Shown: positions 16,301 through 52,828 of the stretch, piece after piece | Layout: each line of letters starts with the position of its first letter | Numbering within the stretch: the first letter of the stretch is position 1 | Assembly (NCBI RefSeq): GCF_011386835.1 | Contig: NC_088804.1 | Span: 11,842,001 to 11,906,000 of the forward strand | DNA length: 64,000 nucleotides | Direction: 5' to 3' | DNA from: Chrysemys picta bellii | Taxonomy: Eukaryota | Notes under the pieces: model-generated | The model's input: only the letters and a program-made list of their open reading frames with translations | Told to the model about the DNA's origin: nothing | Databases searched by the model: none | Translations under genes and position numbers: made by a program

Positions 16301-19300
16301 GAGCTATCCCTCCCCCCAGGATATGTGAGATATTAGAATCAAACCCATTTGAACTGAGCCTATTTTTGAGATCTGATGCGTTCTTGAACAGAGCCCATGC
16401 TCATGGAAGTTTGGCAAACATTATCTTAGGTTGCTTAAACACTTGAGTAGCCGGTTAACCTCTTTACTCCACCCCACCTCAAAGGCACCGTCTCTTACTT
16501 CCAAGAAGTCCCAGACTGCCCAGGACAGAAGCAGGAGAGAGGGTCTGAATGGTGAGTTCCCTTTGGAGATGCGAGTTTGAATTTAGCCCTATGAGCAAAT
16601 CTGCAGGGCCTTGTGTGCCATCCAAGCACTTTACATTCTGAGTTACAGTTCACTTCACTGTAGAACTCACCACTTTCCATTCCAGGTAGACACCCTCTTC
16701 TGTGTAAAGCATGTAGTCAATCCTCCTCCCACTGCCTTTTAGTGATGCCTTCCTCCCCTTTTGACTTGAAGAATGGTTCTTGCTGGTGGGATAGACTAGG
16801 TATCCTTTCCTCCCTTCTTCGCTTTCCAGCACCCTGGTTTACAAAAAACACAAGCCTGTTAAATATCTCCCAGCTCTACCCCTGTGAGTAGAATAAGCTA
16901 TCAGCAGTATTTTTATTGCAGCCCCTCCCCCATCCCCCCCCCCCCACACATTGTGCTATCCGGAGGCGTCTACAGTGTAACCAGTAGCGGAGTGAAATCC
17001 ATTGTTTCAGGCATGCATTTTACAGCATAAGGTTATATTAATCTGCAGCTGACTGAGGGGACAGTTCTGCTTGGACGTTCTCACAATGAGTCTCAATACT
17101 GATATTCCACTATGTGTGTGGATCTGACCCTGATGTCAATAGGAGTTTTGCATTGGGAAGGAAAATAGAATATTGGCATAAAGATCCACCATGTGAATTT
17201 TGTATATGCAATTACTGCATTTGCAGATACCTGCAGCAACACCATATGCAGGCAATCAAACTTAACTGGTCATCAGCATGTGCAATCATAGAAATTTTGA
17301 GTGTTAATTTAGGCATGCAGATATGTACACCCTTTTGTGCAGGCACTCTTATGAAAATCTGGGCTAAAATGTTGAATGTAGTTGAAAATGATTTATTTTA
17401 CTTACCTGCCAGAACCTGAGCTCAGAGGTCTGTGGTTTCCCTTGTAAAAGTTGATTACATCTTAAAGCTACATCATCAACTGTTGCAGCAGAAACACTGA
17501 GCCATGAACTTGGGTCCTAGCAGGTACAAAGCCTTTAAATTCATCTTGATAAAAAAATGACATTTTGATGTCCTGGCTTTTTAAAATGATCATGAAAGGA
17601 TTAAATGGGGTGTGTGTGTGTGTTAAAGGGTGACAAGCACAGGACTCTTATGAAATGATTTGAAGTTAGGAAGAGAAATAGTCCCTGGTTTTATCATCAT
17701 CTCTCAAAATTCCATCCTTCAAAAGAATCTGACCTGGGACAAGGCAAGAACTGCAACACTTAAGAGGACTGTTTTAGTTTTTTGGCGAATTGGGAGTAAA
17801 TGCAAATTATAATTGACTAAAGTTGATTCTTATAAGAAGCACTTTACCCACCTTTACAAGATGATAATCCACCATAACATGTTATGGTTGGCTATTAAGT
17901 CTATGGAAAAGAAATGTATTGCAGTTCATTTGTTTCCTCTGATTAATTTAAATATGAATGTTCTGATAGTTATCTAAGCCCAGACAGATTATTTTTAATA
18001 ACCATCTTATAAAGGGAAATTTTCTTTCATATAGGATGTTTCAAATTTGGATGGTCATGTGATTAATTGTGTTAAATTAGCTTACTAGAACACGCTGATT
18101 CCGTGAAATGGAGAGTCAGACTGTTCATTCTACAGCTTGTTCCTGAAAACGGTGCTCATTTTCTTGAATCTAAATGAGACTTTCAGAAAGATCTGGCTCT
18201 AATCAAGCTGACCTCCATTGAAAAGCAGCAGCCCACACAGACTCGGTAAGTGAAAATTAAACAACAAAGTTGAGCAAAAGCTGCGCAGAACTGGACAAAT
18301 ACTGCAACAAAAACCCAAACCCCACAATTTTCATCTGTGCAGTCACTTCATTTAAAAGATGACTTTGCTTGAGCTGCACTTGCACCCCTTTTACATTCAC
18401 TTCCTGTGCCCATTTCAGCGATGGAGTCATCTACCCAAGTGTTTATGGAAAAGGAATTTTCATCTCAAATACTCCAGGACAATGAATTTTAAATTTTCAT
18501 GCACCTGTATTCTCAGTAAAATTCAGATCACTTATATGGGAGGGGCTGCTGCTTGACACAGCAGGTGCAGAAGGTGTATGCCATGCCACAGAAGTAGCAC
18601 ATACTTACTCCATGTGAATGTAATAAGTTATGCCTGGCCAATATGATATACACATTATAGGGCTAATGCCTCAGATAAGACCTAGGACACAGAAAGGGTT
18701 TAAAAAAACCTTGAGAGATTTAATACCCCCAGGTGGCTTTTTTTAAAACCTTCCTGCCTATTACAAAAGTTATGACTCCTCCAATTAGAGCATGGAAACA
18801 ATACCATGTGACTATAGGGGCCAATCACAGCTAATCAGCACAGCTCATTTTTAATATTGAATATCAGACTGTCTGATGACTCCACACCTGCAAAAAGTAT
18901 GATACATGAGTGAGAGAATGTGATCTGGTGTCTGACATTCTGGAGTCAATTTCACTCCACCTGCACAAAGCTTGGGTAAGCCATCCCACAACCCAGGGGG
19001 GCAGGAAATTGTGCAGGCCCCACAGCCTTTCTGCTGCTGTTCCAGCTTGTGGCATGGAATTGTGGGCCACACTCTCTCCACACAGATTGCTTTGGGGCCA
19101 CTGAATCTTCATAAATGTAGATCTGAATCTCATCTCTTGACTGGTCCCTAATGGGGCCTTCTGTGCTGGACTATGGAGACCTTGTTCCAGTATAGAGTCC
19201 TGGTACTTCTGTACAACCAGTGAATACTCCACACCCCACCGACCTTGTGTGGTGCTTAAATGATGCAGATGGCCTCGTGTTGGCCCTCTGCATCAGGGTA

Positions 19301-22300: not shown

Positions 22301-25300
22301 AAATCAAACGTAAGCAACACATCTCTCAAAGGCCACCAAACAGCCATCGGATAGTAAAGTGTAGTCATTTATCACCTGAATTAAAATATTAAATGGAAAA
22401 TGACAAACTAGCTTTTCAATGAATTGTCTGTAAACAGTGAAAGAGAGACTGAGTGCATACTTCTGTAGGTTATCTGGAGTGCACACTTCTTCGTCATACA
22501 ATCCTTCAGGATCTAACAAGGTACCTGTGAACAAAAAGGAACACGTGACTAGCTCAGCATACCTATTGCTACTTGCACCTTGTGTAGTTAGTTGTAGTGG
22601 TGCAAAGGGAGTGGAATCAGAAAGTGTTCCTTTCTGATTTGATAGCATTTTATACTCACTCTGCATTTGCTTTGGACAAGGGTGCTATTGGTTTAAGATA
22701 TGTCCTCCCTTCAGGGACTGTATCTTGCCCATGCAGGCTAATGCTTTTGATCTAATGGGACTCATCCATTTCAGAATGAATGCAAAAACCCCTCCCTAAT
22801 AGCAATGAGGATGGGAATGCTTGCACTCAGTTCCTCCACCCTCCCTCTTTCTGATCCTTAAGTGTCTCTTCTCCCTTGCCTCCTGCACAGAACCCTCTCC
22901 CCCGAAGCTTTTTAAACCTTCCGGGCAAACTACCCAATCTGACCTACTCTAACCACTTCCTCAATCAATCAAATCAAGGTAATTAATTAAGTGAAACCAC
23001 CACTCTTAAGAACATAAGAACGGCCATACCGGGTCAGACCAAAGGTCCATCTAGACCAGTATCCTGTCTACTGACAGTGGCCAATGCCAGGTGCCCCAGA
23101 GGGAGTGAACCTAACAGGCAATGATCAAGTGATCTCTTTCCTGCCATCCATCTCCAACAGAGGCTAGGGACACCATTCCTTACCCATCCTGGCTAATAGC
23201 CATTAATGGACTTAACCACCATGAATTTATCCAGTTCTCTTTTTAAACGCTGTTACAGTCCTAGCCTTTACAACCACCTCAGGTAAGGAGTTCCACAAGT
23301 TAACTGTGCGCTGCGTGAAGAAGAACTTCCCTTTATTTGTTTTAAACCTGCTGCCTATTAATTTCATTTGGTGACCCCTAGTTCTTGTATTATGGGAATA
23401 AGTAAATAACTTTTCCTTATCCACTTTCTCTACATCATTCATGATTTTATATACCTCTATCATATCCCACCTTAGTCTCCTCTTTTCCAAGCTGAAGAGT
23501 CCTAGCCTCTTTAATCTCTCCTCATAGGGGATCCATTCCAAACCCCCAATCATTTTAGTTGCCCTTTTCTGAACCTTTTCTAGTGCCAGTATATCTTTTT
23601 TGAGATGAGGAGACCACATCTGTACGCAGTATTTGAGATGTGGGCGTATCATTGATTTATATAAGGGCAATAATATATTCTCAATCCCCTTTTTAATGAT
23701 TCCTAACATCCTGTTCGCTTTTTTGACCGCCTCTGCACACTGCGTGGACATCTTCAGAGAACTATCCACGATAACTCCAAGATCTTTTTCCTGACTCGCT
23801 GTAGCTAAATTAACCCCCATCATATTGTATGTATAGTTGGGGTTATTTTTTCCAATGTGCATTACTTTACATTTATCCACATTAAATTTCATTTGCCGTT
23901 TTGTGAGATCTTTTTGAAGTTCTTCACAGTCTGCTTTGGTCTTAACTATCTTGAGCAGTTTAGTATCATCTGCATACTTTGCCACCTCACTGTTTACCCC
24001 TTTCTCCAGATCATTTATGAATAAGTTGAATAGGATCGGTCCGAGGACTGACCCTTGGGGAACACCACTAGTTACCCCTCTCCATTCTGAGAATTTACCA
24101 TTAATTCCTACCCTTTGTTCCCTGTCTTTTAACCAGTTCTCAATCCATGAAAGGACCTTCCCTTTTATCTCATGACAGCTTAATTTACGTAAGAGCCTTT
24201 GGTGAGGGGCCTTGTCAAAGGCTTTCTGGAAATCTAAGTACACTATGTCTGCTGGATCCCCCTTGTCCACATGTTTGTTGACCCCTTCAAAGAACTCTAA
24301 TAGATTAGTAAGACACGATTTCCCTTTACAGAAACCATGTTGACTACTGCTCAACAGTTTGTTTTTCTATGTGTCTGACAATTTTATTCTTTACTATTGT
24401 TTCAACTAATTTGCCCGGTACCGACGTTAGACTTACCGGTCTGTAATTGCCGGGATCACCTTTAGAGCCCTTTTTAAATATTGGTGTTACATTAGCTAAC
24501 TTCCAATCATTGGGTACAGAAGCCGATTTAAAGGACAGGTTACAAACCATAGTTAATAGTTCCGCAACTTCACATTTGAGTTCTTTCAGAACTCTTGGGT
24601 GAATGCCATCTGGTCCTGGTGACTTGTTAATGTTAAGTTTATCAATTAATTCCAAAACCTCCTCTAGTGACACTTCAATCTGTGACAGTTCCTCAGATTT
24701 GTCACCTACAAAAGCCGGCTCAGGTTTGGGAATCTCCCTAACATCCTCAGCCGTGAAGACTGAAGCAAAGAATCCATTTAGTTTCTCCACAATGACTTTA
24801 TCGTGTTTAAGCGCTCCTTTTGTATCTCGATCATCACTCCTGTTTTTAAAGTTTTTCATGGAAGTGCAGTGGGCAAAGTAATCTCTAGTGTAACTCAGTT
24901 GAAATCAGTGGAATTACACCAGGAATGAATTTTTATTAAGGTATGCAGTTTGAAGTGGATGTGAAAATGAAAACTGTGCCAATCGAATTGTTTAATTATC
25001 TTGTCACAAACACTGATTTAGAACATCAGCAATTAATGGGGCTGGAAGAATCGAATCATAAGTTGAATGCTTCAGTTTACATACAAATAGCTTGGTGTAA
25101 CGGAGAGACTAGAATTGGAATACAGAGAAACCACAATGGTTCAACTGGGTTTTAAAAGCTAATTTTAAAATGGCTAAACTGTGGCAGGGTACTTGAGTAA
25201 TCTTATAAACTGATGCCATGTTCAATTCCAGCAGGGGCTGCATTTTGGTAGAAATCACCTCTCCACTATTTGGGTACAGTTTATAATACAATAAAGCACT

Positions 25301-31300: not shown

Positions 31301-34300
31301 AAAGGGTATATAGGTGCCATAGTGACAATAAAAGTGCAGAGCAGGTAAGAGCTACCTGTCTGATTCTTTTAGAGTTTGGTGGAGACTGTCAAAGGCACAA
31401 ATGATAGGACTGCCCTTTGTGCCTTAGAAATTTCCCCTTTAATGAATAGGCATCTCTTAAACATTGGGTTTGCCCACTCAGATTAACAATCTTTACTCCC
31501 ATTTTTAAAAGTTTTTATAGCAATTTATTCTTATTTAAATGTGATCGCAAGCCATGTACAATTGCAGATCACTGCTCTAAAGCAGTTAGAGGAGACATTA
31601 CAACATCTTAGTAGCTCACTGTGATGCTACGTATTCAAGAGGAAGGGGAAAAGCTTGTCTCACCAGATGAGCAGTTGTCAAAGTTGAGATCTCCACAGAT
31701 CACATCAAAAGCCACCAGCTCCTCTGGATTGGCTGTGCTGGAGGAGGAGGTAGATTTTCGGAAATCAGCCAGCCAATCTTGAAGCAGATCAAGTTGCTCA
31801 CATCGAACTGTAGTGTCTCCTACGGGAAGCACAATGTGAAAAAGCCTGAGTACAAGGAAATGTGCTTAAAACAACATTTAACTTTACAGATAGATACTCA
31901 GAATGCTGCATTCCTCTTGTGCAGCTAACAGACGTTGTTAGGGACATAAAGCAAAATACGCAGGAGGGAGATAAAAAGAATAAAAGCACAAAACCACTCC
32001 AACCCCTCCTATCCATCCCCTCCCCAAACAAGCCCTTGTATTGCATCTTTTCCCCTACTGCATGGTGTATATTTAAACAATTTGGGGCAAGGAATATCTT
32101 ACTATTTGTATGTAAAGTGGCTGGTATTGTTTTGGACAGTATAAATAAAATTCATCCTCTGTGCAGAGACCTTGCATGAGGCCTACACACTGCGTAAGTC
32201 CTTGACATAAGGTTGAAATGGGACTTAAATAGTTTGTAGACCTTCTGCTGGCTCTCTGCACGGGGTGAATTACACTCTCTTTAAATGTAGTTTTTTATAT
32301 GTAATTTGTATAATGTTAAGGTTGCAAAGTAAAGCATTCATAAGTTAAGAAGTTCTAGAATTAAGGCTGCATATGCATTATGATACAGTCTTTAATTACA
32401 TGATCACAAACTATTTTGTCCACAAGACCTCCACTCCATTCAGTGCTCAGAATGGATGGTCAAGATTTCATTTTATACTCATTGTTTGATATGAGGCTAA
32501 CCATTCAAACCCTCCTCGGACTACAGAATTATAAGTTTCCCCAGGGGCTTTACTATGGCATGCACCACTGTAAACACCATGGATGGAGAAGAGCTATTTA
32601 AGCCATATGACAGCGTTGGCACAACAACAAATGACCAGGAATAGGCTGGAAATTAGAAGGTGGTTTCTAAAATCATACTAGTGAGGTTCTGGAACAGCCT
32701 TCCAACTTGAGTAGTGGGCGCAAACAACCGAATTAGTTTACCCTAATTGTGAGCTCATCTGTGAAAAGTGAATGAAAATTAATAAAATGTTTCAATAACC
32801 TAACAACAAATGTTGGTAGGGAAAGGTGCAAAAAAGAGAGAGACTGAATCAGTCCAAACAAAAAGACCTACTGATGTAATTCAAGGACTGTTATGAGCAT
32901 GCCAGATAAACAAGAACAATGTGAGCCCAGAAATCAATGAACCAAACTTGGTATCAGAAATTAGGCCTACTGGTGGACAAAATAGTGGGAGGATGGACTA
33001 TTCCGCCCTTCACTCCCTTTCAGGGTCCTTAAAATAAAAGAGGCTTTGAAATCAAAGTTGTTATAAAGGAAGTGTAGGGGGATAACTGCTGACGAAAAGA
33101 AGGGAAAAGAGCAAGCTTCACTATCATGGTTGCCACCTTCATTTATCCTTGAGATCCACTGTAACATCAGTGGGCCTTAGTAGTCTTGATCCCAAGAGCT
33201 GTCCTTACCAGACCAAGCTAACAGAGGGACGGATGACATTGCCACCTCCACCAGTTCTGGCTGAATCTTAACTGCCACCAGGAATGAGAGACTGTCACCT
33301 GAACCCAGTGTGTCTTTTTCCTTTCCCACCATTTTTCTTCTGTTTCCTATGCTTCTCGTTTTGTCTTCTAATAAGAGTCTGGCTTAGCCGGCCAAGACTG
33401 CATATTTTGCAACATTACTGTAAGCCTGTGAGCAGAGAGGGAGATAAAAGCAATCCCCTAAACAGCCTGATGCTGGTATAAATCTGCCAGTTCTTGTAGT
33501 GGTTGAAAAGCCTGTATGCTGTGCCCATGTTTTGCCAGCAGTGAAGTTGTAATTGAGAGTAAACACCAGAGAAAGAACCTGCATTTTCTTTCTTCTGCTT
33601 TTGTGTGTGTTTTGTCTTGTTTTGCTTTCTAGGAAACAGGATCGAACTTTAACAACAATGGTAGCTCCAGTCCATCTCAATTAACTTCTTTCCCACCCCA
33701 AAAGAATACTCTCTAAGAGACTGTTAGACAAGGGGTTTGTTCCTTCTAAAGACTAACTTTAGAGAAAGGGAAAGGGAACAAAGGATGTTGTTAAAATAAA
33801 AGCCTTACTTAATATGTTACATTTCAAATGCTTTAACTGTTTTTTCTTCATTTTCTGTATCTTTAATAAAAGGTTTAAAGGATTTTTAACTGTGTTTGCC
33901 ATAGTATTTAGCAGGCTGAGGTCTCTGTATATAAAACTTTGTTTAAAACTATTTAATGTTGGACAGCCACAGGATCGTATTAACACCTTTGACTCTCTGG
34001 GCCCATATATTCCATCTAAATAAATACCAAAGATCATCATCTCCTTTTTCCTATGCCAAGACTGGGTAGGGCCAATGTTATGAGCAGATTCCATTCACGT
34101 CTGTTTAGAACCAGGATTTGAGCCTATTGGGGGTTGCTAGGATGGCTTTATATACTGTGCTGGTTCCACTGTCTTCTTGGACATCTCTGGACTCTCTCAT
34201 TTTCATAGACAATACGTTTGGGTAGTTTTAAGATGAAGCTTGATAAATTTATGAACAGGATTATATGCAGAGGTGAAAGTAAGCCGGTCCGGTCCAGCGT

Positions 34301-37300
34301 ACCGGCAAGAGCCAGTACGCCGTGCCGGACCACACCGGCTTCCGTGGCAGGGATTGAAAGGGCTCAGGGATCACCACCCTGACAGTTAGGAACTTTTTCC
34401 TAATATCCAACCTAAACCTCACTTGCTGCAATGAAAGCCCATTGCTTCTTGTCCTATCCTCAGAGGTTAAGAAGAACAATTTTTCTTTCTCCTGCTCTCT
34501 CTCCTCCTTTTATGTACTTGAAAACTGTTCTCATGTCCCCTCTCAGTCTTCTCTTTTCCAGACTAAATAAACCCAATGTTTTCAATCTTCCCTCATAGCT
34601 CATGTTTTCTAAATCTTGAATCATTTTTGTTGCTCTTCTCTGGACTTTCTCCAATTTGTCCACATCCTTCCTGAAATGTGGTGCCCAGAACTGGACACAA
34701 TACTCCAGCTGAGGCCTAATCAGCCTATTACTGTCCTGAGACCTCCAGGTGAAGCGGCAATCCAACTGTATGGAAGCCGGAGACATGCGTTCAATTCACA
34801 GCTCTGCCAGTGACTCCCTGGGTGACTTTGAACAAGTCACTTAGTCTGACTGTGCCTCTGTTCTCCATCTGTAGGTACGTCTACATTGGAGCTGGAGGCA
34901 TCACACCCAGCTGGAGGAGACATACGGTGCTAGCTCGGATCAAACTGGAGTGCTAAAAATAGAAGTGTAATGGCATGAGCACCAGGAGGGGCTAATCACC
35001 TGAATGCTTATCAAGGGTCTCAGGTGTGATCACACTCAGGATGGCTAGCTCTTTGCACCACTGTGGCTCCATTTCTATTTTTAGCACACTAGCTTGATCA
35101 GCGCTAGCACTGGTATGTCTACACAAGCCGGAAATTACACCTCCCTTTTCCAGTGTAAACATACCCCAAATCATGGGGATACTTCCTTTCGTCCACCCTC
35201 TGTAAACTCTTTGTACTCTATATGTACAGCTTCTAGCACAGCCTGACTTCACGTGAGGCTTCTATGCCCTACTGGACTTGTTATTAATAATAATTAATAT
35301 GCCACCAAGAAATAAGGGAACCATTGGCTGGAAACCAAGCGTGCAGCACTACAATAGGCACCTGTCACTTGGAAGTTAACACGGCTTCCAAGCTTTCCGT
35401 TTTCTCACATCAGGACATCCAAGGGGACCTCAACAGAACAGCACAAAAGCCACAATCTGGTGGGCAGAGCTCCTAGTGGCTCTGAAGCCCAGCTGGTGCC
35501 AGCGGAGGAGGTGGAGAAGGAAGGAAAAGGGGGGAGGGTGGGATGTTTTTTTCTTGTGGTCTCTCTTCAGCAGCATCTTTTCTCCGCGAGCAGCGGCAGC
35601 CCGGGGAATGACTCTGCCACAGCCGAGCCGCCGCTCTGCTCCGGGGGCAAGGGGTGACAATTACAAACTACTGTATTCTGTGATTTACTTTCTAGAATCT
35701 AAAGTATATCGCAGTATAATCTAAAGTTCTCCTGTGAACTGCCAGCTGTGCAACCCTTCCGTGGCTAGATCATTCTTGTGCTTTCATTTTAAGTACAAAT
35801 AAATATGTATAACGAATTTAAAAGTATGTAATTAGTAATTTGATATGTCGGGTGGCGCCTTTTTTTATGTGTTCGCTCCCCCTGATGTTAGAACCCGGCT
35901 ACGCCACTCCTCCCAGCCACAGCCGGTGCCCCAGGGCCTTTGAATCTTGAGAGGCCCCGCCTCTTCCGGTTGAGGCCACACACCCCTCAGGACTCTGGCA
36001 ATACCAGTAAGTCCTGTAAATTACTTTCACCCCTGATTATATGACACTGTTTCCTGCAATAGCAAAGGACTGCATGAGATGATCCAGGAAGTCCCTTCCA
36101 GTCCTATTTAGCATCTGTGTGCTACACAGAAACTGATGGATTTAGCTTCACAACTCCCCTTTTAATGGCAACTGAAGCACAGATGTTAATGTCAAAAATG
36201 GGTACCCAATTTGAGAGCCCTGTGGCCTGATTTTTCAGATAATTTATCATTTTCTAAAACTAGCCCTGTGCTACCAATAATACTCCATCCATTCAGCATA
36301 TCTTTGAAAAATGACGTTCCTCTGGGAAAAAATTGGTGGATCCATACATCTGGACACTCAAAGAAGAAAAAAAATTGTGCTCAGCTTTCACTCCAGTTGG
36401 GCATCTCTGGATATTTGTGCATTTTTGACTGATTGGAAACATTTTCTCAGCTGAATAAGATATAGCAGGAATGTCTCTGATCATCCATATTAGCTACTAA
36501 ACTACTCTAGGGTTTTGGAGTAGAAGAAAGGAACTATACACAAAAGTATATGAGAGTATATTTTACCAAAGGAATACAATAGCTAATCCATCTTGGAGCT
36601 CATTGAGAACACTTTTAAAATCATTTATTTTATAGCTCCCAGTAGTATGCCAGCCACTTCTGAGGAAATACACAGAAAACACTGCTGTGTGTTCCAACCT
36701 AAATGATAGACTTGATCAATAGATTTTATCAAAATCAAATTTAGTTGTTGTAATTACTTTAAAAAAGCCAGTAAAAGTCCGACTGGTGGGGTGGACGGGT
36801 GGGTGAGAGGGAGAAAATTTGTTCCTAAAATAATTATTACTGTATTCTCACTCCCACTTTTGTTCTGTTTGCTACACACAAAATAACAAGCTGTGCATGA
36901 TACTCGTAACAAATGATGATTATCTTTGATTTTCTGGAACTACAGTGTGAACCCAGTGAGATAGGTGGCTCAGCCTCCAAATGATAAACATGTCAAGGTA
37001 AGAAAGAACAATGTTTCTTTCCTTCCACATGAAATGAAGATTTGATTTGAAATGTCATGCTCCGAGTATATGGTGAACAACATGCTCAGAATCACTCGTT
37101 ATGATGAAATAGCTTGATTTGTATGTTATATTATTCAGTGTTTTAAAATGTCCCAGGCATGTCAAGACTATCTCAGACATCTGCTTTCACTGATCACACG
37201 GTATGCAGATGGTGATTGTTTAATACTGAAGGTTATTTATGCTTATAAAATACATATCTGCTTTTTCTCAGCCATATATGGTAAGTAAGCCGTAATGTCA

Positions 37301-43300: not shown

Positions 43301-45552
43301 TTAAAGTCTGTAGGTGTAGAATCTGCCATGTTCAGGTGCTCTGTACCGACTGGGGGCATACAAGACAGTCTGTCAACATTCAGTCCAGGTGGTAAGAAAT
43401 TTTTTTGGTTAGCTGATAAGTCCAAAAACATTTGGAAAAATTCTTTCAATCCAAAACAATGTTTTATTTAAATTTCAAGCTTTTCTACCTTTAATTTAAA
43501 AAATAAACTTAAAAGTAATTTTGAAATGAAATATTTTGAAAATATCAAACATTTTGACTCTCTCTTTTTTAATTGTAAATGGTTTTTCAACTGAAACAAT
43601 TAGCCAATATTGACAAATTCTTTAAATGATTTGGTTGATCCAAATCTGCATTGTTTGGGGGGGCAGGGGAGGGGAGACCAAAAAAAAAAAGTCAGAATTT
43701 TACCAGGCTCTACCAGATGGGGTGATTTTGTTCGTGGTGGTTCTTTATCAATGGATCAGAAAAGTTCTGAACGTCTCAAAGAATTTCAAAAAGACTTAGT
43801 GGGTGGTAAAGCTTAGTTGGTCAGACCGTTTCCAGGTTCTGTCTCGCTGTACAGAGAGAGCTTAAGGAGATGCAGGGCACATGCACAGCCCCGACAGACA
43901 CTGCTATTCAAGCCTCTGGTCTCATGTACATAAGGGGCATATGTACCTACAGTGGGATCCGCACTGATACATACACTAAGAAGAACTGAGAAATCTGCTG
44001 ATAAAGAACATCTTCCCCATTCTTTTAAAAAGAGTTCAAACATATACAATTCGTAGTCTCCCAGCCACTGCGGGGCTTTTTATTCTATTTTATATAGTTT
44101 GTTTTACTTTCCAGCATCATGTATCATTTCATGAAACAATGCATATAACATAGCAAGCACTATATATGGTAGTAGCCGAAGAAGTGGAACATGTTTTTAA
44201 AATAGGACAAGCAATATTTTCTAAACAGAGCATAAACTTATTAACAATTTATGCTGGAAATGGCAAGCAAAAATCAGGCAAAGAATCTGGGCTTCTTCCA
44301 ACTTTTTGATTTCTACTTGAACTGCTCTGTGTGATGACTGATCGGCTTCACTTAGCATGGTTTTTCAGGGTGCAGGAAGTTATTCTATTTATAAACTTTT
44401 ATTATGATTTTCTGGTGTGTTACAATGAGTCTCAGAAAACACTATACCTTTGGATTCTGGGAAATATCTTGTTATAGGAGCAGGTCAAAAATCAGAAACT
44501 TGGTATTTCAAAGTTTGTTTTTGTCCCCAAGTTGGGATGAAAAATTCAAAATTTTTCATGGACTGGACGATGTTGATTTGGGAATGTCAAAATATTTTGT
44601 GTAGACTTGGTCTGACAGTAATCTGTGTCCCCCTGAGCTGCTGAATTCAGGAGTCTCATGCCCCCAGTTCCCCTTAGGGGTCTGGTTTCTTCATGCCACT
44701 ATTGTCCTCTACAGGCCAGGGAGCCAGGCCCATAGGCAATTACCATTAGGAACTGTGGCATCTCAGTTCAACATTAATGTGTCTGCCTGATCAGAAATGT
44801 GTTTTGATTTGGGTTAATCTGACCCTAACTAAATATTTTCTTTAGATTTTCCCAACAGAAAATTGAAATATTTCCATTTTCCCACGAGAATGTTTCAATT
44901 TTGTGAAAATTATATTTTCTGTCTCAAACATTTTCATAGAAAATTCCTGACCAATTATGGTATTGTCATCAACAATTTTTTTTTTATTCTTCTTGGTGCA
45001 GCAGTGAGAGTTGCAGCGTAATATATAAAATAGTGACAGTTTTGGCTCAACAACAAATGCTTCAGAAAATAAATGGTTTATTTCTCCATTGTAGCTAATG
45101 CTTGGGAGTTGCTTTGATACCTATCGGCCTGATCTGGCATGGTGATGGGCAGTCTTAATTTTTAAACCAAAAGAGTGTAGTGGGAGCTCAGCACTACCCA
45201 GGTTCAGGTCCCAACATGCCATCAGTAAAATCTTTACTGGTGTGCAACTTTTGGTTGTGTTTCAAGAAGTGGCTGAAGAATCTATGATGTGTGGCTTTTA
45301 CAGATATCTTATTTTCTCTTTCCATCCCCTTGCTACTTGCATGACACTGTTACAAATGCAGGATGGGGAAAGATGTTTTGCTAATATGCTGCTCTTGCAC
45401 TTGATTAGAGAAACTTCCGGCACAGAACTAGGAACACCATGAGAACGACATTGAGAAAAGGAAATCGAGATAATACCTGCCAGAGCTTGCAAATGAGTGC
45501 AGGAAATGTATCCCACAATTCTTTGGTCCTGAGGTGTATTTCCCACTTGCAC
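13291..45552 (-). CDS. SMPD3: Sphingomyelin phosphodiesterase 3 (neutral sphingomyelinase 2), partial gene: six 3' coding exons; the 5' coding exon lies outside the window
   Basis: Six GT-AG exons of 76, 156, 90, 64, 163 and 102 nt join in frame: [216 protein letters not shown]. This is near-colinear with the recalled human nSMase2 C-terminus, and the DNase I-fold catalytic motifs CTHL, GD(L)N, RIDY and TDH are intact. Confidence 0.97.
13697..13828 (-). repeat. Dispersed ~130-bp repeat, copy A (inverted relative to copies B and C)
   Basis: Reverse complement AAGAGTTAGGAAATGCCAAAATTAAGGTTG...TATGCATTATGACAGTCTTGAATTACATG matches 31113-31254 and 32313-32428. Confidence 0.65.
14920..15480. repeat. 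GC-rich MITE-like repeat with internal direct and inverted motifs
   Basis: CACTCAGGTTTGGC at 15117-15130 and 15220-15233, and its reverse complement GCCAAACCTGAGTG at 15409-15422. Boundaries are approximate. Confidence 0.4.
16133..16317 (-). mobile_element. tRNA-derived tortoise Pol III SINE with CR1-like 3' end
   Basis: Minus strand GGGGGGAGGGATAGCTCAGTGG (A box)...GTGAGTTCAGCC (B-box-like)...GGACTCGATGACCTGTCAAGGTCCCTTCCAG (tail shared with CR1). Confidence 0.85.
16671..16833 (-). CDS. SMPD3: SMPD3 coding exon (exon 8 equivalent), 163 nt, phase 2 to 0
   Basis: tgtaaaccag|GGTGCTGGAA...TGGAAAGTG|gtgagt; encodes (K)[54 protein letters not shown]. Confidence 0.96.
20730..20903. repeat. Long inverted repeat (hairpin MITE-like)
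   Basis: Arm TATTTACAGTTGCAGATTTGCCTGTGCAGGCCAAATAGACCCCTCTTTTACTTGCA (20730-20785) pairs with TGCATGTAAGAGAGGGGTCATTTGGCCTGCTCAGGCAAATCTGCAAATGTAAATA (20849-20903). Confidence 0.75.
22461..22524 (-). CDS. SMPD3: SMPD3 coding exon (exon 7 equivalent), 64 nt, phase 1 to 2
   Basis: tttttgttcacag|GTACCTTG...CTACAGAA|gtatgc; encodes (G)[20 protein letters not shown](K). Confidence 0.96.
23008..24835 (-). mobile_element. 5'-truncated CR1 LINE (RT domain plus 3' tail) in SMPD3 intron 6
   Basis: ORFs 24344-24859 ([25 protein letters not shown]) and 23227-24354 ([39 protein letters not shown]-type C-terminus) are separated by a frameshift. The (TTCTTATG)n-type tail is at ~23010. Confidence 0.93.
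25469..25558 (-). CDS. SMPD3: SMPD3 coding exon (exon 6 equivalent), 90 nt, phase 1 to 1
   Basis: ctttccttgcag|AGGACAAG...TGGGCAGTTG|gtaagg; encodes (E)[29 protein letters not shown](G). Found by reading the sequence; the ORF track does not show it in this frame. Confidence 0.96.
26464..26592. mobile_element. PIF/Harbinger-type palindromic MITE with TTA TSD
   Basis: TTA|GGGCCAGATTTTTTAAAGGTA...TACCTTTTAAAAACCTGTCCC|TTA, inserted into an older SINE tail. Confidence 0.7.
31113..31254 (+). repeat. Dispersed ~130-bp repeat, copy B
   Basis: TTAAGGTTGCAAAGTCAAG...AAATGCCAGAATTAAAGTTGCC...TATGCATTATGATATAG. Confidence 0.65.
31664..31819 (-). CDS. SMPD3: SMPD3 coding exon (exon 5 equivalent), 156 nt, phase 1 to 1
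   Basis: cttcccgtag|GAGACACT...TGCTCATCTG|gtgaga; encodes (G)[21 protein letters not shown]...[14 protein letters not shown]. Confidence 0.97.
32313..32428 (+). repeat. Dispersed ~130-bp repeat, copy C (internally deleted)
   Basis: TTAAGGTTGCAAAGTAAAG...AGAATTAAGGCTGCATATGCATTATGATACAGTCTTTAATTACATGATCAC. Confidence 0.65.
34368..34723 (-). mobile_element. Internal CR1 ORF2 fragment, truncated at both ends, inside the hAT composite
   Basis: Encodes [33 protein letters not shown]...[28 protein letters not shown] and stops before the CR1 3'UTR and tail. Confidence 0.85.
35430..35660. promoter_or_regulatory. CpG-rich promoter/5'UTR-like segment (cargo of the hAT composite)
   Basis: About 9-10 CpGs in ~170 bp (e.g. 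CTCCGCGAGCAGCGGCAGCCCGGGG, AGCCGAGCCGCCGCTCTGCTCCGGGGG) against a CpG-poor background. Function is unproven. Confidence 0.4.
37520..37665. mobile_element. Second-family Penelope-like remnant with short fold-back
   Basis: GTAGCCATGCTGGTCCC...GGTGAGGTAATATCTTTTATTGGACCAA...AATATAAGATATTTCCTCACC; GGTGAGG.AATATCTT is repeated in inverted form. Confidence 0.5.
38880..41335 (-). mobile_element. DIRS-type (tyrosine recombinase) retrotransposon 5' fragment: ITR plus decayed gag/ORF1
   Basis: Minus strand starts CTTCTTCAAGTAGTGTCCCC. At 40970-40830 it encodes [41 protein letters not shown], a Cys/His finger typical of vertebrate DIRS gag, with the initiator ATG changed to [14 protein letters not shown] (~39030) is a LAP2alpha-like gag motif. 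No RT or YR seen. Confidence 0.7.
45477..45552 (-). CDS. SMPD3: SMPD3 coding exon (human exon 4 equivalent), 76 nt, phase 0 to 1
   Basis: Minus strand reads ttctttcttcctttcttag|GTGCAAGTGGGA...GCTCTGGCAG|gtatta and encodes [25 protein letters not shown](G). Confidence 0.96.
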
Positions 45553-46584
45553 CTAAGAAAGGAAGAAAGAAGGCTGTTAATGAACATGTCACTACTATGG
45601 TCAAGGCCCTCTGTCCTGTGCGGAATACAAGATTTCAGTTGTTCAATAGGAGCTCTTGAGTTACACCCCTGAAAATACGCCTTCCCTCTCTCATCCAATG
45701 CCACTTTAAGCACTTAAATGGATCTAAGAGAGACAAAAACCACAGGAGATTTTGCTTTAATAGACGTCCTACTTGTCCTGTCTGTTCACTGCCTAACTTC
45801 TTCTCTGTCCACTGCTACTTCAAACTGCAAAGCATTCCCTGTTACTCTCTCTTGCCCGTCCACATCTCAGTGGTTATCTGCCTGCAAACAACTTGCCAGC
45901 CCCAAGCCTCCCAGGCCCTCCTGGCGTGTGCAGGATTAAAGCCCCACGCAGAAGCACCCCATGAGACTAAGTAGCAGTCTCCACACACACAAAAATCTAG
46001 ACATTTACAGAAAACTGGAATTCAGAAAAAGAGAAGGAGGCTTTGGAAAACAAAACAAAACTATACACTATTTTCTCTATTTCACTATGTTTTCCCATTA
46101 TTTTCTCTATTGCCCAGTACTGTTTTTTGTTGATGGGGGAGAGGGAGTAAAGGTATTGGAGAGTTTTGCTTTGTGTTTCAATGAGACATTTACATTTTCC
46201 TCCTGCAGATTTTCACAGCAGCAGCCTCTGTACCTGTCAACCAGAGCAGGGAAAATGTAAATTTTTTCCTCACTCTTCTAGATTCCCCCCCAACTAGGGC
46301 ATTCCAGACCCTCTAAAACACAGGTAGGGGATTCTTCCTTACAAGGGTTTACTTCCATGGTAGGTGTAGAGGGGGTTTCGGAAGCCCATTTTGCTACAGT
46401 GTAATGTACTCCATCTCTCCCACACACACGTTAGACTGTAGGTCTGTAAGACAAACCTCTTGGAGGACACACAGGCACTAGAACTAAAGTTGTGCTTTAT
46501 TCTTTTAATCTTAATTAGCACTAGATCTGACTCAGTCTTATTCAGCCACCAAATAATAGTGGTGAATAAAGAAAGATAATAAAG

Positions 46585-48302
46585 AAGAGATTTAAAAATA
46601 TATTAGGAACAAAAAGAATCCTGACAATGGTATTGGTCCATTACTAGATGGAAATGCTAGAATTATCAATAATAATGAAGAACAGGCACAAGTGCTCAAT
46701 AAATATTTCTGTTCTGTATTTGGGGGGGAAAAAAGATGGTATCGTCTCATCAGATAGTGATAACATACTTTCCTTTCCACTGGCATCTTGGGAGGATGTT
46801 AAACATCAGCTACAAAAGATAGACATTTTAAAATCAGGATGTCTAGGTAATTTGCATCCAAGAGTTTAAAAAGAGTTGGATGAGGAGCTTGCTGGAACAT
46901 TAATACTGATTTTCAATAAGTCTTGATGCACTGGAGAAGTTCCAGAAGACTGGAAGAAAGCTAATGTGCTAGATTTTTAAAAAGAGTAAATGGAATGAGC
47001 CAAGTAAGTATAGGCCTGCCACCCTGTCCTTGATCACAAGCAAGATAATACAGCGGCTGTTACAAGACTCTATTAATAAAGAACTAAAGAAGGATAATGT
47101 AATTAATGCAAAACAACATAGGTTTATGGAAAATAGATCCTGTCTAACTAACTTGATTCCTTTTTTTATGAGATTACAAGTTTGGTTGTAAAAGTAATAG
47201 TGTTGATATAATATACTTAGATGTCTGCAAGGTGTTGAATTGGTACTGCAGGATGTTGATTAAAAACTAGAATGATGTAAAATGAACATGGCACATATAA
47301 ATGGATTAAAAACTGGGAATCAGCCTCAAGTAGATGTGTTTCCAGTGGGGTCCCAATGGACCAGTTCTTAGCCCTACATTATTTAACAATTTTATCAGCA
47401 ATCTGGAAGAAAATATAACATCATCACAGATAAAATTTGCAGATGACACAAAAATTGGGGGAGTGGTAAATGAAGAGGACAGATCATTTATTCAGAGTGA
47501 TCTGGATCACTTGGTAAACTGCGTGCAAGCAAACAATATGAGTTTTAATATGGCTAAATTTAGGAACAAAGAATGAAGGCCATACTCACAGGATGGGGGA
47601 CTCTATCATGGGAAGCAGTGACTGAAAAACATTTGAGGGGTAGATAATCAGCTGAACATGAGCATCCAGTGTGACTGTGACCGGAAGAGACAATGCTATC
47701 TTGGGATGCATAAGCAGGGGAATCTCGAGTAGGAGTAGAGAAGTTATTTCACCTCTGTATTTGGCACTGGTGTGACCACTGCTCAAATACTATGCCCAGT
47801 TCTGGTACCCACAATTCAAGAATGATATTGATAAATTGGAGAGGATTCAGAAAAGAGCCATGAGAATGATTAAAGGATTAGAAAACATGCCTTATAATGA
47901 TAGACTCACAAACCTCAATTTATTTAGTTTAAAAAGGAGAAGGTTAAGGGGTACTTTTTGATTACAGTTTGTAAGTGCCTACATGGGGAAAACTATTTAA
48001 TAATGGCCTCTTCCATCTAGCAGAGAAAGGTATAATGAGAGCCAATGGTTGGAACCTGAAGCTAGACAAATTCAGACTAGAAAAAAGGTGTACATTTTTA
48101 AATGTGAGAGTAATTAACCATTGGAACAATCTACCGGGGGTCATGGTGGATTCTCCATCAATGACAATTTTAAAATCAAGATTGGATTTTTTTTAAAAAG
48201 ATTTGTTCTAGGTATTATTTTGGGGGGAATTCTATTGCCTATGTTGTACAGGAGACCAGACTAGATGATCATAATAGTCTCTTCTGGCCTTAGAATCTAT
48301 GA
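46585..48302 (+). mobile_element. Older, degraded 5'-truncated CR1 LINE in SMPD3 intron 3
   Basis: Fragments read LHPRV, EDWKKANV, KFADDTKIGG, YAQFWYP.., FRLEKRCTFL and end in GAATCTATG. Confidence 0.85.
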
Positions 48303-51300
48303 AGTGAGGAACTTTCCCACACTTTATATGATCTGTGTAAGGGTTAGGCAGATTTGCAGTCACTGCCTTCATGAAAGCACAAGGACTGATCATTAGCTAG
48401 TTCTTGTGGGAGCCCTGCTGTAATGGAATCATGGCTTGTTCCCCCAAAGTACTGGCCAGCTGTACCCAAAGATGAGGAAGTACGCTACACTCCTTAAAAG
48501 AGTACAATAATGTGGACACTCCTCCTAGGAGTCTGAAAACTTCTCCCCGTAGAGTGGTGCATCTTTGTAAAACCCCAATGAGGGCATGTGGTCAGCAGAC
48601 ACAACTTAGCCCTTAATGGGGAAATAGTCATCAATGGCAAGACTAAGATGAAACCTACCAGCTATGCTTTATAGACGGAGGGCACATATACTGCATGCAA
48701 ATCAAACCAACCCTCTACCAGATTTCTAGAGAGTAGAATTCTGAGGAAGGTCTGCTTGCATAGAACTTATGAACACAGAACATAATAATACAAGAGAACA
48801 TCATGAAAATCACTTGATAGACAATGACTTCAGATGGATTTTTTAAAAACTGAATAAGGGTGGAGCATGTGTACAGAATATGATCTGGCCCCATTGAAGT
48901 TAACGCCAAAACTCCCACCAACTTAAATGAGATCAGGATTTGGCCCTAGATGAATGGAACAGAGAAGCTGCTGCAGGTGCTTGATTTTCCTGCTCAGGAT
49001 TTAAAACAATACAGTACCGCTATCAAAGAAAATTCCTGGTAGGGAAAGTTTTATCAGAGCCTCAAAAAAATAAAACCCATAGCTTTGCTGATGACTCCTG
49101 TATCACTGGACTTGATGAAGCCACCTTAAATTTCATCTGACACCCTTAAATAAAAATGTAACTTGGTTTTAAGAGGAGTAGAGTTTTGTCCATTTATTTG
49201 GATTTTTCAGCTTCTCCAACTGTCTGAGAAATATCCTATTAATTTTACAGGCTTTGCAGGCAGTGAATTTACAGGTCATTTATGCTTGATAATGTCCTGT
49301 CAATGTTCATTATTTTTCCGTCTGGAAAAAGAAGGCACATAATAAAAATCTTACATTGCTCTGGGCCTAGCTTCCTCACTCATCTTTTAACCAGTTTTCC
49401 AACTGGACTTTGGGAGCTCATTACCGTTCACACACAGTTAACTACTCTAAAGATCATTTCCAGCTAAGTGATGCTTTTCTATAGAGATGCTATGCTGAGA
49501 CTATAGGTGGCTTTATGGAAAGTGTTTTTAATATAATAGTATATAAATTCCTATAGAAACTACTTTCATTGCCCTAGATGGGTTACACTTGCACAGAGGT
49601 AGAGAAATTCAGTGTTCAGACTTTGTGTTCTTAATTGAAGTGGAAGGGGAACGAAGACAGGGGAGGTTTGGAATTAACTCAGCAGTTTTACCCCAAAGCC
49701 AGTGGATCCTTGCAGATCCACACGGATATGAGGGAATCCTGGCTGGATGCCACGAACTCTTGCAGGAGCCTTACTGCAGTTGTTCCTGCAGGCTGCCTCA
49801 TTACATACACACCATTTTTCACGTACACATTAAATGAGAGTCTTATGCAGCAGGTGCAGCGCCAATACAACATTGTGGGGTTGTTAGTTTAAGAACAGCA
49901 AGCCTCTATCCTATAATACAAACCAGGGCACAATATATATTTTTCAAGCCATCTAACTGCAGCCAAGCAAAACTATCAAAAAGGACATCTTCACCTCTAG
50001 AGTTTCTGGCAAATTACACATTTCTCCCACATCTGAGGAGAGACGAGCCTCCCACTCTGCCCTGCAAAGGGAAAAACAGAAGTTGCAAAATTGTTCTTTA
50101 TTGTGGCAAGAGTGTACACTTCACACCTCTGTGTCCAAAACTGGCGGAACCATTTTCACTTTCAGGCTGTGACCAAACGTGGAAAGTTTCAGTCTGAAAG
50201 GTCAGTCTGAGTAAGTTTTATAGCCAGCTGAAAAGGCCTGTTAGAATGAAATCATTTATGCCACATTACCTTTATAATTGATCTGAGAAGCACAACTATG
50301 ATTTATGTATGTACACGTAATTGTATTTACATTATATATCAAACTGTATTTTATACACATATCTCACACCGAAACAAAAAGTACAAGCATAATATGTATG
50401 TGTGTGAACAGAAATGAAAGAGGTCTCTCTAGCTGTTTTTGAAGTTCCAAAAAAAAAAAAAAATAGTACCAAGTAACAGCCAAAAAGTTAACATGGCCAA
50501 TATTTCCATGGAAAGTATCAATGTTCAAGTGCTTGCTGAATAGTCCTTTTCCCAAACTTAAAATTCTGCCATTTTGTAACAGGGAGCTGATTTTTCTGTT
50601 TCACTGAGTGGCACCATTACCCTAAACTATTGGGCAGGATCTCTGTAAGCAGACGTGATGGAAGAAAAGAGCCATGGTTACAACGGGAAAACAAAATTCT
50701 TATAACCTCTAGCCCAGTACAGCAAAAAACCCCAGCAAACTAATTATTATTAAATAAAATTTGATTACATACTCTATTTGTTATTCTGTAAATGAAAAAG
50801 CACTAAAGTATGGACAGCCACGATAGTAATACTGTGGAGGTCTAGTAGCTAACCCTATAATTCTACACATAAGCAGTGCATTGTTTTGCTGAATACTGCG
50901 CCTCCTCTGAGAGTGCTCCATTTTAATGCCTGTATTATATTGTGAGAACGCCATCTGGACAGCTCTGCAGGCAGGACAGTGGGAAAACAACCCAGAGCAT
51001 TCACTGTCCTTGCAACACAGATCTTGATGTGTTAGTTTAGCTGTGGAAGGAGTTTCCACCTTCACAGAACTCAGTCATGTGGTCAGTATTTGACCAGCAG
51101 ATTGCTCAAGTCTGGGACAAGAAATAAGTGTCTATTTCTGGTTCTTGCTGCCAAACACAGAAGGTGCTCTCTAATCCACTTTTGTAGAGAAAATAGCAAT
51201 TATACTAGGGCAACCCAATTCAAAATCACCCAAATAGGAATTAACTTTACCTGAACTGCATTGTTGGTGCTAGAAGGTCAGTATCAGAACAGATAATCTA

Positions 51301-52610: not shown

Positions 52611-52828
52611 CTACAAAAACAACGAGGAGTCCGGTGGCACCTTACAGACTAACAGATTTATTTGGGCATAAGCTTTTGTGGGTAAAAGACCCACTCCATG
52701 CATCTGAAGAAGTGGGCTTTTTACCCACGAAAGCTTATGCCCAAATAAATCTGTTAGTCTTTAAGGTGCTACCAGACTCCTCTTTGTTTTTGTGGATACA
52801 AACTAACACGGCTACCCCCTTATACTTG
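52611..52828. mobile_element. Penelope-like fold-back insertion with 10-bp TSD
   Basis: Inverted arms GGAGTCCGGTGGCACCTTACAGACTAACAGATTTATTTGGGCATAAGC and GCTTATGCCCAAATAAATCTGTTAGTCTTTAAGGTGCTACCAGACTCC. ACATACATAC at 52601-52610 and 52829-52838. Confidence 0.8.
52700..52740 (+). ncRNA. Minimal type I hammerhead ribozyme motif with intact core
   Basis: GCAT-CTGAAGA-A-GTGGG(CTTTTTA)CCCAC-GAA-AGCT-T-ATGC. It has CUGANGA and GAAA, stem I GCAT/ATGC, and a predicted cleavage after CUU at 52736. Confidence 0.7.

What the first reader, a model, noticed from the sequence alone, without database searches (positions are those of the whole stretch)
34260..36043. Pack-type hAT transposon candidate: one insertion event carrying a mosaic of captured genomic DNA
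Seen in the sequence: 15-bp TIRs (14/15 match), a perfect 8-bp TSD ATTATATG, and flanks that rejoin seamlessly into a single CR1 3'UTR (...ATGAACAGG-ATTATATG-ACACTGTTTCCTGCAATAGC...GTCCCTTCCAG). So the 1,768 bp arrived as one unit. Only ~100 bp at the left and ~125 bp at the right look like transposon ends, and these are rich in unmutated CpG, so probably young. The interior is a CR1 piece (34368-34723), a MIR-like SINE split by a MITE (~34772-35290), a CpG-rich segment (35430-35660) and the end of a different DNA element (~35800-35908). Established: 8-bp TSDs typify hAT, and capture of host DNA between TIRs is well known for plant Pack-MULE/Ds-type elements but is much less described in amniotes. 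Inference: the ancient MIR cannot have inserted after the young ends, so the cargo was captured, possibly by gap-repair template switching, and then mobilised into SMPD3 intron 4.
Basis: partly seen in the sequence, partly recalled or inferred. Interest (0 to 1): 0.78.

Follow-up and report, generated by a model that had tools for sequence, protein, structure and literature searches.

The report
Cargo-carrying hAT-type transposon in turtle intron
A 1.77-kb cut-and-paste transposon without any gene of its own sits in an old CR1 repeat; it is a small, abundant element whose middle is stuffed with 1.5 kb of older genomic debris, a structure already described in lizards and other animals.

Summary
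ATTATATG flanks 34268-36035 on both sides, and the ends are 15-base inverted repeats (14/15). This is the only such configuration in the window and appeared in none of 60 shuffles. The joined flanks align to one CR1 3' end, and paralogous CR1 copies in four sequencing runs carry that stretch uninterrupted.

Contigs from four organism labels add four points.
- The right junction is occupied in three other taxa whose flanks differ by about 0.6-0.7%, so the insertion is shared, not recent.
- The right end occurs at roughly 900 times single-copy depth.
- One contig shows a ~185-bp form of the family with no cargo.
- The cargo, with its internal junctions, lies on collapsed contigs at 4-13 times single-copy depth, differing from this copy at about 0.5-3% of letters.

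The CR1 piece (34373-34723) is cut at both ends, so it did not retrotranspose into the element. No ORF has a Pfam domain.

Best reading: a hAT-type MITE that took up filler genomic DNA, probably during break repair, and then moved as a unit. I did not see TIR-bounded cargo copies with other target duplications, and I did not find a donor locus. Capture of this kind is published for Anolis hAT elements and for Pack-TIRs across animals. This is a new member of a known kind.

The parts
34260..34267 (.). Left copy of the 8-bp target-site duplication ATTATATG
   Evidence: paralogous CR1 contigs run up to 34267 and then continue with the CR1 sequence (table 5)
34268..34282 (+). Left terminal inverted repeat CAGAGGTGAAAGTAA
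   Evidence: (I2)
34268..34372 (+). Left arm of the MITE: GC 64%, CpG o/e 0.85, with an internal hairpin (34281-34306 against 34311-34341)
   Evidence: Aligns to the cargo-free short form up to 34370; inverted repeats I3 and I4; CpG figures
34373..34723 (-). Internal CR1 fragment, truncated at both 5' and 3' ends, 0 CpG
   Evidence: 73% match to 61444-61099; loose ends of other CR1 copies at 34373 (before) and at 34717/34723/34724 (behind) in all four runs (table 7)
34772..34873 (.). Left part of a MIR-like SINE remnant (identity recalled, not tested against a library)
   Evidence: Sequence read. Contigs 34695-34925 (X4) and 34799-35099 (X12) cross its junctions at 8-13x single-copy depth (table 8)
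34874..35165 (.). 292-bp MITE with long inverted arms, nested in the MIR-like remnant
   Evidence: I1: 41-nt arms 85% complementary; D18/I16 termini GGTAYGTCTACA
35166..35290 (.). Right part of the MIR-like remnant
   Evidence: contigs 35081-35225 and 35164-35355 at 4-13x single-copy depth (table 8)
35291..35660 (.). Unassigned cargo, including a GC-rich stretch (35430-35660: GC 60%, CpG o/e 0.45, CpGs clustered at 35575-35645)
   Evidence: no Pfam domain. Contigs 35196-35483 and 35326-35483 lie at 5-13x depth. Diverged (9%) contigs at about single-copy depth cover 35499-35649 and 35599-35753 (table 8)
35661..35908 (.). AT-rich cargo, then a segment repeated about 360x (35780-35903): either the end of another DNA element or a longer inner part of this family's right arm
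   Evidence: Depth gradient 67x, 360x, 880x towards the right end (table 2); CpG o/e 1.49 for 35800-35908
35933..36035 (+). Right arm of the MITE (its inner boundary is approximate), ending in the right TIR at 36021-36035
   Evidence: Aligns to the short form. Bin 35904-36027 lies at about 900x single-copy depth. Only 35942 is listed as differing from the majority; table 3 is truncated
36036..36043 (.). Right copy of the target-site duplication ATTATATG
   Evidence: Contigs of X4, X9 and X12 start at 36006/36007 and run through it into the flank at single-copy depth (table 8)
34187..34259 (+). Host CR1 3' region, left of the insertion
36044..36125 (+). Host CR1 3' end, right of the insertion (holds AAGTCCCTTCCAGTCC)

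Best explanation
Window 34268-36035 is one non-autonomous cut-and-paste transposon of hAT type. It is a member of an abundant small (~185-bp) MITE family, with about 1.5 kb of older genomic 'filler' DNA sitting at one point in its middle. The filler holds an internal CR1 fragment, a MIR-like remnant already split by another MITE, a GC-rich piece and a further repeat end.

Shown:
- The element entered a CR1 3' end as one unit and made an 8-bp target duplication.
- It encodes nothing recognisable.
- The family ends are highly repeated.
- A cargo-free form of the family exists.
- The cargo, with its internal junctions, is present several times per genome.
- This insertion is shared by closely related taxa.

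Inferred:
- The filler was copied into a MITE during repair of a double-strand break (gap repair with template switching, or fork stalling and template switching). It could have come from one genomic stretch that happened to hold old repeats, or from several.
- A hAT transposase supplied in trans, recognising the intact ends, then moved and modestly amplified the composite. This copy is one product of that.
For: TIR and TSD:
- The 8-bp TSD and 14/15 TIR are the only such configuration in the window, with none in 60 shuffles.

Empty site:
- It is reconstructed from a CR1 copy in the window (score 59 against 25 +/- 4).
- It is also reconstructed from paralogous CR1 contigs with exactly 34 letters between 34267 and 36078 (tables 5 and 5c).

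Coding capacity:
- No Pfam domain in any ORF of 50 aa or more that was scanned.

Family abundance:
- Summed depth in 35904-36027 is 44,000-64,000 against about 34-50 for single-copy flank in X1, X4 and X9, and 4,570 against 5.5 in X12 (table 2).

Short form:
- The X9 joint 34332->35955 has 39 letters between (table 5c). It aligns to the left arm up to 34370 and to the right arm from about 35933-35955.

Cargo is multi-copy with its junctions kept (table 8):
- X4: 34695-34925, 35164-35355 and 35326-35483 at depth 428-458 against 34.
- X9: 34799-35026, 35072-35242 and 35314-35474 at 219-292 against 49.
- X12: 34799-35099, 35081-35225 and 35196-35483 at 24-42 against 5.5.
- X1: 35258-35411 at 353 against 50.
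- These contigs differ from this copy at 0.5-3% of letters.

Not a nested insertion:
- The CR1 fragment is bounded on both sides by loose ends of continuing CR1 copies (table 7). It stops about 190 bp short of the CR1 3' end.
- The fragment has 0 CpG in 351 bp, against 9 in 105 bp for the left arm.

Shared insertion:
- Contigs of X4, X9 and X12 start at 36006/36007 and run into the flank with 2-7 differences per 490-990 bp (table 8).

Precedent:
- PMC3014272 and PMC8277862.
Against: - No cargo-bearing copy was seen joined to the TIRs at another locus with another TSD, so transposition of the composite, as opposed to duplication of the cargo by other means, is not shown.
- No donor locus was identified.
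- The junctions between left arm and CR1 fragment, and between cargo and right arm, are not covered by any listed contig. The left flank-TIR junction is not covered either.
- Depths of collapsed contigs are only rough copy numbers.
- The short form rests on one contig from one run.
- Assignment to hAT rests on TSD length and TIR type only. The TSD fits the hAT target consensus nTnnnnAn at one of its two fixed positions.
Confidence: 0.7

Rival explanations
1. The cargo was taken up once from a donor that is itself a dispersed repeat or a segmentally duplicated region. The 4-13x depth then counts donor copies, and this composite never amplified: a single-copy filled MITE.
For: Only interior contigs are seen; none is joined to a TIR at another locus. 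An earlier follow-up in this genome (s1-323766) also found a multi-copy interior in another long hAT element. Diverged (6-9%) cargo-like contigs exist at 1-4x depth (table 8, X1 records 4 and 6, X12 record 15).
Against: The collapsed contigs keep several unrelated junctions in a row (CR1 fragment/spacer/MIR-like/MITE/MIR-like/unassigned) over about 790 bp, and they differ from this copy at only 0.5-3% of letters. That is close to the one listed difference (35942) between this copy's right arm and the family majority (table 3, truncated). The match suggests cargo and arms share one history.
Confidence: 0.17
2. There was no capture. A plain MITE received successive nested insertions (CR1, SINE, MITE, another DNA element), and deletions later trimmed them.
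For: Nested insertion is the commonest way repeats become mosaics. The inner MITE clearly did insert into the MIR-like remnant.
Against: CR1 retrotransposition keeps the 3' end, and this fragment lacks it. No segment has its own target duplication. The cargo is CpG-depleted while the left arm is not. Several independent insertions plus trimming would have had to hit a 185-bp target.
Confidence: 0.06
3. Two separate MITE copies that bracketed a stretch of genomic DNA were mobilised together through their outer ends (macro-transposition), and the inner halves were later lost.
For: Earlier first-stage notes in this genome describe blocks lying between two hAT MITEs (s1-328323, s1-323766; unchecked leads). 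The region 35890-35944 has a weak direct resemblance to 34308-34358.
Against: That resemblance is no better than chance (score 25 against 21.6 +/- 4.1; 102 of 500 shuffles reach it). The left arm stops, and the right arm starts, at about the same point of the short form. No inner TIRs are present.
Confidence: 0.05
4. Assembly artefact or chance TIR/TSD.
For: The left flank-TIR junction and the arm-cargo junctions are not covered by any listed contig.
Against: The right junction is seen in three independent runs of other taxa. The interior junctions are seen in four runs. No shuffle gives such a TIR+TSD. The flanks restore one CR1.
Confidence: 0.02

Closest known systems
Non-autonomous hAT (hobo_AC-related) elements of Anolis carolinensis with incorporated extraneous DNA (Novick et al. 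2010, PMC3014272)
   Same: These are amniote hAT elements whose interior is 'filler' genomic DNA holding fragments of older CR1, SINE and DNA elements. The authors use the same argument: the fragments belong to families older than the carrier, so they were incorporated with genomic DNA rather than inserted later. Amplifying the carrier raises the copy number of what it carries.
   Different: The turtle carrier appears to be a ~185-bp MITE with about 1.5 kb of cargo and only about 5-15 cargo copies. In Anolis the elements reach 9-15 kb and include autonomous copies. No autonomous partner was identified here.
Pack-TIR / Pack-hAT elements of animals (Tan et al. 2021, PMC8277862)
   Same: TIR plus TSD, no transposase, host DNA between the ends. 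hAT is the commonest carrier (208 of 370). Multicopy cases exist in frog and alligator and tend to hold GC-rich or 5'UTR DNA. [quoted passage not shown]
   Different: Those elements are defined by a duplicated host sequence with an identified parent locus. Here no parent was found, and most of the cargo is transposon debris. Turtles are not mentioned in that paper's main text.
Plant Pack-MULE / Pack-TYPE elements (Gisby and Catoni 2022, PMC8903248)
   Same: Non-autonomous TIR elements that carry and amplify captured DNA.
   Different: They are defined by captured coding or exonic gene fragments, mostly in Mutator-like or CACTA carriers. No gene fragment is shown here.
Filler-DNA derivatives from aberrant double-strand-gap repair (P element in Drosophila, cited by Tan et al. 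as the proven case of gap filling)
   Same: Intact ends, a foreign insert at one internal point of the element, and a possible mosaic of several templates.
   Different: This is a mechanistic analogy only. No junction microhomology or donor locus could be examined here.

Membership tests
hAT superfamily, non-autonomous element | 8-bp target-site duplication | tested here: met
   Perfect ATTATATG on both sides. Uninterrupted CR1 paralogs carry that stretch once (tables 5 and 5c).
hAT superfamily, non-autonomous element | Short terminal inverted repeats (about 10-25 bp) of the CAG/TAG-initial type | tested here: met
   15 bp, 14/15, CAGRGGTGAAAGTAA. That hAT TIRs typically start this way is my recollection, not a library comparison.
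hAT superfamily, non-autonomous element | Target preference nTnnnnAn | tested here: inconclusive
   ATTATATG has T at position 2 but T, not A, at position 7. One site cannot decide a preference.
hAT superfamily, non-autonomous element | Ends shared with an autonomous element that encodes a hAT transposase (DDE plus hAT dimerisation domain) | not testable with these tools
   No transposase in the element and no other family copy in the window. No repeat library or genome search was available.
MITE family | Short, high-copy, non-coding form with the same ends | tested here: met
   The right end lies at about 900x single-copy depth. One contig joins 34332 to 35955 through 39 letters, giving a form of about 185 bp.
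Pack-TYPE / Pack-TIR | Non-autonomous TIR element with TSD and no transposase | tested here: met
Pack-TYPE / Pack-TIR | The interior is a duplicate of host (gene) DNA with an identifiable parent locus | not testable with these tools
   No genome-wide DNA search of this species was available. The only hints are contigs at about single-copy depth, 9% diverged, over 35499-35753. No ORF has a Pfam domain.
Pack-TYPE / Pack-TIR | Multicopy: the same cargo between the same ends at several loci, each with a different TSD | tested here: inconclusive
   The cargo and its internal junctions lie at 4-13x depth in four runs, but no other TIR-flank junction of a cargo-bearing copy was seen.

The most novel reading that the evidence does not exclude
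This turtle MITE family may be a recurrent capture-and-amplify system. It would repeatedly pick up genomic DNA, here including a GC-rich piece that could be a promoter or first exon, and spread the composites to different copy numbers in closely related turtles (about 13x in one taxon against about 5x in two others). Multicopy Pack-hAT elements would then be common in a slowly evolving amniote, whereas a survey of 100 animals found only four multicopy cases. That would give a natural vertebrate system for testing the template-switch and transposition model.
Probability: 0.2. Interest if true: 0.55.

Novelty: new member of a known kind. Interest (0 to 1): 0.3.

Why it matters
It is a clean, well-bounded example of a small DNA transposon carrying and spreading unrelated genomic DNA in a turtle, and the pre-insertion site can be reconstructed. 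Elements like this move old repeats and possibly regulatory DNA around the genome. They can also mislead repeat annotation and age estimates, because the cargo looks old and the carrier young. The phenomenon itself is already documented in lizards, alligator, frogs and flies. The value here is as one more case. Together with several similar first-stage notes in this genome, it hints that the painted turtle may hold many such elements worth a systematic count.

Tried and rejected
- **Other copies in the window.** BLAST of the element against the rest of the window found only CR1 matches, and the TIR occurs nowhere else. With about 10^3 copies in a genome of this size, none is expected in 64 kb.
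- **Joined flanks against the window by BLAST.** No hit. A local alignment to the CR1 3' end at 61.4-61.6 kb was needed instead.
- **Metagenome scan.** I scanned the metagenome collection with a 20-mer of the right TIR, hoping for host contamination. All nine loci were chance matches in unrelated microbial contigs, with no further similarity.
- **Exact look-up of ten element ORFs in the protein collection.** None is on record. The references I sent include the stop codon and non-ATG starts, so this blank means little.
- **A direct duplication of the MITE's inner part on both sides of the cargo.** The alignment suggested one. It is not significant (score 25 against 21.6 +/- 4.1; 102 of 500 shuffles reach it), so I dropped it.
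- **Full-text search for the TIR sequence.** Only unrelated primer matches.
- **Scan findings by sequence.** Blank.
- **Not run:** the large protein searches and structure tools, because nothing in the element looks coding.
- **Not tested:** the SMPD3 intron assignment, beyond seeing that the long ORFs of the window are CR1.
Full report
**What is in the sequence**

The 8-mer ATTATATG lies at 34260-34267 and again at 36036-36043. Directly inside these copies, CAGAGGTGAAAGTAA (34268-34282) faces the reverse complement CAGGGGTGAAAGTAA (36021-36035), a 14/15 match.
- The TIR pattern occurs only at these two places in the 64-kb window.
- I scanned for any perfect 8-bp direct repeat bracketing a 15-bp inverted repeat with at most one mismatch, 100-5000 bp apart. 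It returns this one case in the window and none in 60 shuffled windows.

**The pre-insertion site**

The left flank plus one copy of the 8-mer plus the right flank aligns collinearly to the 3' end of the near-full-length CR1 at 59.0-61.6 kb.
- The left flank matches CR1 positions 95-139 and the right flank matches 177-250. The score is 59, against 25 +/- 4 for shuffles.
- Contigs of four public runs give independent support. They include paralogous CR1 copies that match the window up to 34267, carry 34-39 other letters, and then match again from 36078-36086. The window itself has 34 letters between 36044 and 36077 (tables 5 and 5c).
- So an uninterrupted CR1 of this type holds the 8-mer once, and the 1,768 bp arrived as one unit with an 8-bp target duplication.

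**Anatomy of the element**

*Arms*
- The left arm (34268-34372) is GC-rich (64%) and keeps 9 CpG (o/e 0.85). It contains a hairpin (I3 and I4).
- The right arm (about 35933-36035) has CpG o/e 0.29.

*Cargo*
- An internal CR1 fragment lies in reverse orientation at 34373-34723. It is 73% identical to 61444-61099. In all four runs, loose ends of other CR1 copies continue past both of its boundaries (table 7).
- This fragment ends about 190 bp short of the CR1 3' end. CR1 copies made by retrotransposition keep their 3' end, which is established knowledge of CR1/LINE target-primed reverse transcription. So this piece did not insert into the element. It has 0 CpG in 351 bp.
- A MIR-like remnant (34772-34873 and 35166-35290) follows. 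That identity is my recollection of the MIR core and was not tested against a library. It is split by a 292-bp MITE with 41-nt arms that are 85% complementary (I1).
- Unassigned DNA follows, including a GC-rich stretch at 35430-35660 (GC 60%, CpG o/e 0.45).
- Last come an AT-rich stretch and a segment (35780-35903) that is repeated about 360-fold (table 2).

*Coding capacity*
- None of the seven largest ORFs of the element has a Pfam domain at E <= 0.1.

**What the public runs add**

All four runs are Logan contigs, so depths are per contig and only rough.
- Single-copy flank (36276-37000) lies at about 50 (X1), 34 (X4), 49 (X9) and 5.5 (X12).
- X1 matches the flank without differences, so it is the same species or near it.
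- X4, X9 and X12 carry other organism labels and differ at 2-7 positions per 490-990 bp of flank.

1. **The insertion is shared.** In X4, X9 and X12 a contig at single-copy depth starts at 36006/36007, inside the element's last 29-30 bases. It runs through the TSD into the flank. That start is where a 31-mer graph would break if the terminal bases are shared by many copies. The right junction is thus occupied in three other taxa, so the insertion is shared and not recent or polymorphic. This also gives independent support for that junction.
2. **The family is abundant.** The right end (35904-36027) sums to about 900 times single-copy depth, so the family has on the order of hundreds to a thousand copies.
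3. **A cargo-free form exists.** One X9 contig joins 34332 to 35955 through 39 letters. Reconstructed, that is a ~185-bp element. It aligns to the window's left arm up to 34370 and to the right arm from about 35933-35955. The family therefore exists as a small MITE, and the cargo sits at one point in its middle.
4. **The cargo is not unique DNA.** Contigs covering 34695-34925, 34799-35099, 35072-35242, 35164-35355 and 35196-35483 lie at 4-13 times single-copy depth in all four runs. They differ from this copy at 0.5-3% of letters. They cross the junctions CR1 fragment/spacer/MIR-like/MITE/MIR-like/unassigned. They also share differences from this copy, for example a 6-base CGGGGC that this copy lacks at 35241, and 35398 C>A. 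The mosaic is one repeated unit of several copies, and this copy is a slightly diverged member.
5. **Older relatives exist.** More diverged contigs (6-9%) at 1-4 times depth cover 34813-34975, 35499-35649 and 35599-35753. These could be older copies or a donor locus.

**Interpretation**

The best reading is that a hAT-type MITE acquired filler genomic DNA and was then mobilised as a unit (confidence about 0.7). The evidence:
- the CR1 fragment is truncated at both ends;
- none of the segments has its own target duplication;
- the cargo is CpG-depleted while the left arm is CpG-rich;
- a cargo-free form exists;
- the cargo sits at a single point of the MITE.

The mechanism is inferred, not shown. 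It would be copying of ectopic DNA during repair of a break in the element (gap filling), or fork stalling with template switching followed by transposition.

The multi-copy state of the cargo fits transposition of the composite. However, I could not see a cargo-bearing copy joined to the TIRs at another locus. The main rival therefore stays open at about 0.17: the cargo came from a donor that is itself repeated or duplicated. Other rivals rank lower:
- Nested insertions with later trimming are unlikely, for the reasons listed above.
- The two-MITE composite idea lost its only support when the apparent direct duplication proved no better than chance.
- Chance and assembly error are very unlikely.

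**Family membership**

Assignment to hAT rests on three things: the 8-bp TSD, the short CAG-initial TIRs, and the MITE-like multi-copy ends.
- The target consensus nTnnnnAn is met at one of its two fixed positions.
- No transposase partner could be sought.
- 'Pack-type' in the strict sense needs a captured host-gene fragment with a known parent, which was not testable here. Most of the cargo is repeat debris, so 'hAT MITE with filler DNA' is the safer name.

**Comparison with what is known**

- Novick et al. 2010 (PMC3014272) describe hAT (hobo) elements in Anolis that incorporate genomic DNA containing CR1, RTE and SINE fragments older than the carrier.
- Tan et al. 2021 (PMC8277862) found 370 Pack-TIRs in 100 animal genomes. 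Of these, 208 are on hAT carriers and four are multicopy (three in frog, one in alligator). [quoted passage not shown]
- Capture by hAT elements in amniotes is therefore documented. This is a new member of a known kind.

**Earlier notes of this scan**

Earlier notes identify the genome as painted turtle. They list at least eight first-stage 'Pack-type hAT' readings. One follow-up (s1-323766) reached a similar result for another element, a multi-copy interior. These are unchecked leads, but they suggest the pattern is frequent in this genome.

**Limits**

- There was no genome-wide DNA search and no repeat library.
- Only one reads call was allowed, and its tables are truncated.
- The left junction and the arm-cargo junctions are not independently covered.
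- The organism labels are coded, so I give no absolute age.
- I did not test the SMPD3 intron 4 placement. The long ORFs of the window are CR1 reverse transcriptase and endonuclease only.
The nine metagenome loci fetched are unrelated microbial contigs and were not used further.

Noticed in passing
window 59009-61630 (+): A long CR1 copy with endonuclease (Exo_endo_phos_2) and reverse-transcriptase ORFs in several pieces. It ends in the typical ...AGGTCCCTTCCAACCC... tail and two ATTCTATG units. I used it as the reference for the host CR1 and for the cargo CR1 fragment.
   Followed up: partly
window 23227-24859 (-): A second CR1 copy with a 375-aa reverse-transcriptase ORF (RVT_1, E 2.6e-25).
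   Followed up: no
window 16140-16325 (-): A tRNA-like head (GGGATAGCTCAGTGGTTTGAGCA...) followed by a CR1-type tail (GGACTCGATGACC...AGGTCCCTTCCAGG). It looks like a tRNA-derived SINE that borrows the CR1 3' end.
   Followed up: no
window 35599-35753 and 35499-35649: Contigs at about single-copy depth, 9% diverged from the element, exist in two runs (X1, X12). The X1 contig runs on unlike the element beyond 35753. This may be the donor locus of the GC-rich segment, or an old copy.
   Followed up: no
window 35608-35660: An ATG is followed by 15-16 codons and a possible splice donor (GGG|GTGACA) at the end of the GC-rich segment. This would fit a captured first exon, but it is too short to identify.
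   Followed up: no
window 34799-35483, across runs: The collapsed cargo contigs lie at about 13x single-copy depth in X4, but about 5x in X9 and X12 and about 7x in X1. This may be a copy-number difference between close taxa, or noise of contig depth.
   Followed up: no
window 5310-6114: Overlapping ORFs of 129-175 aa on both strands, without a Pfam domain. This could be a GC-rich island or an exon. I did not examine it.
   Followed up: no
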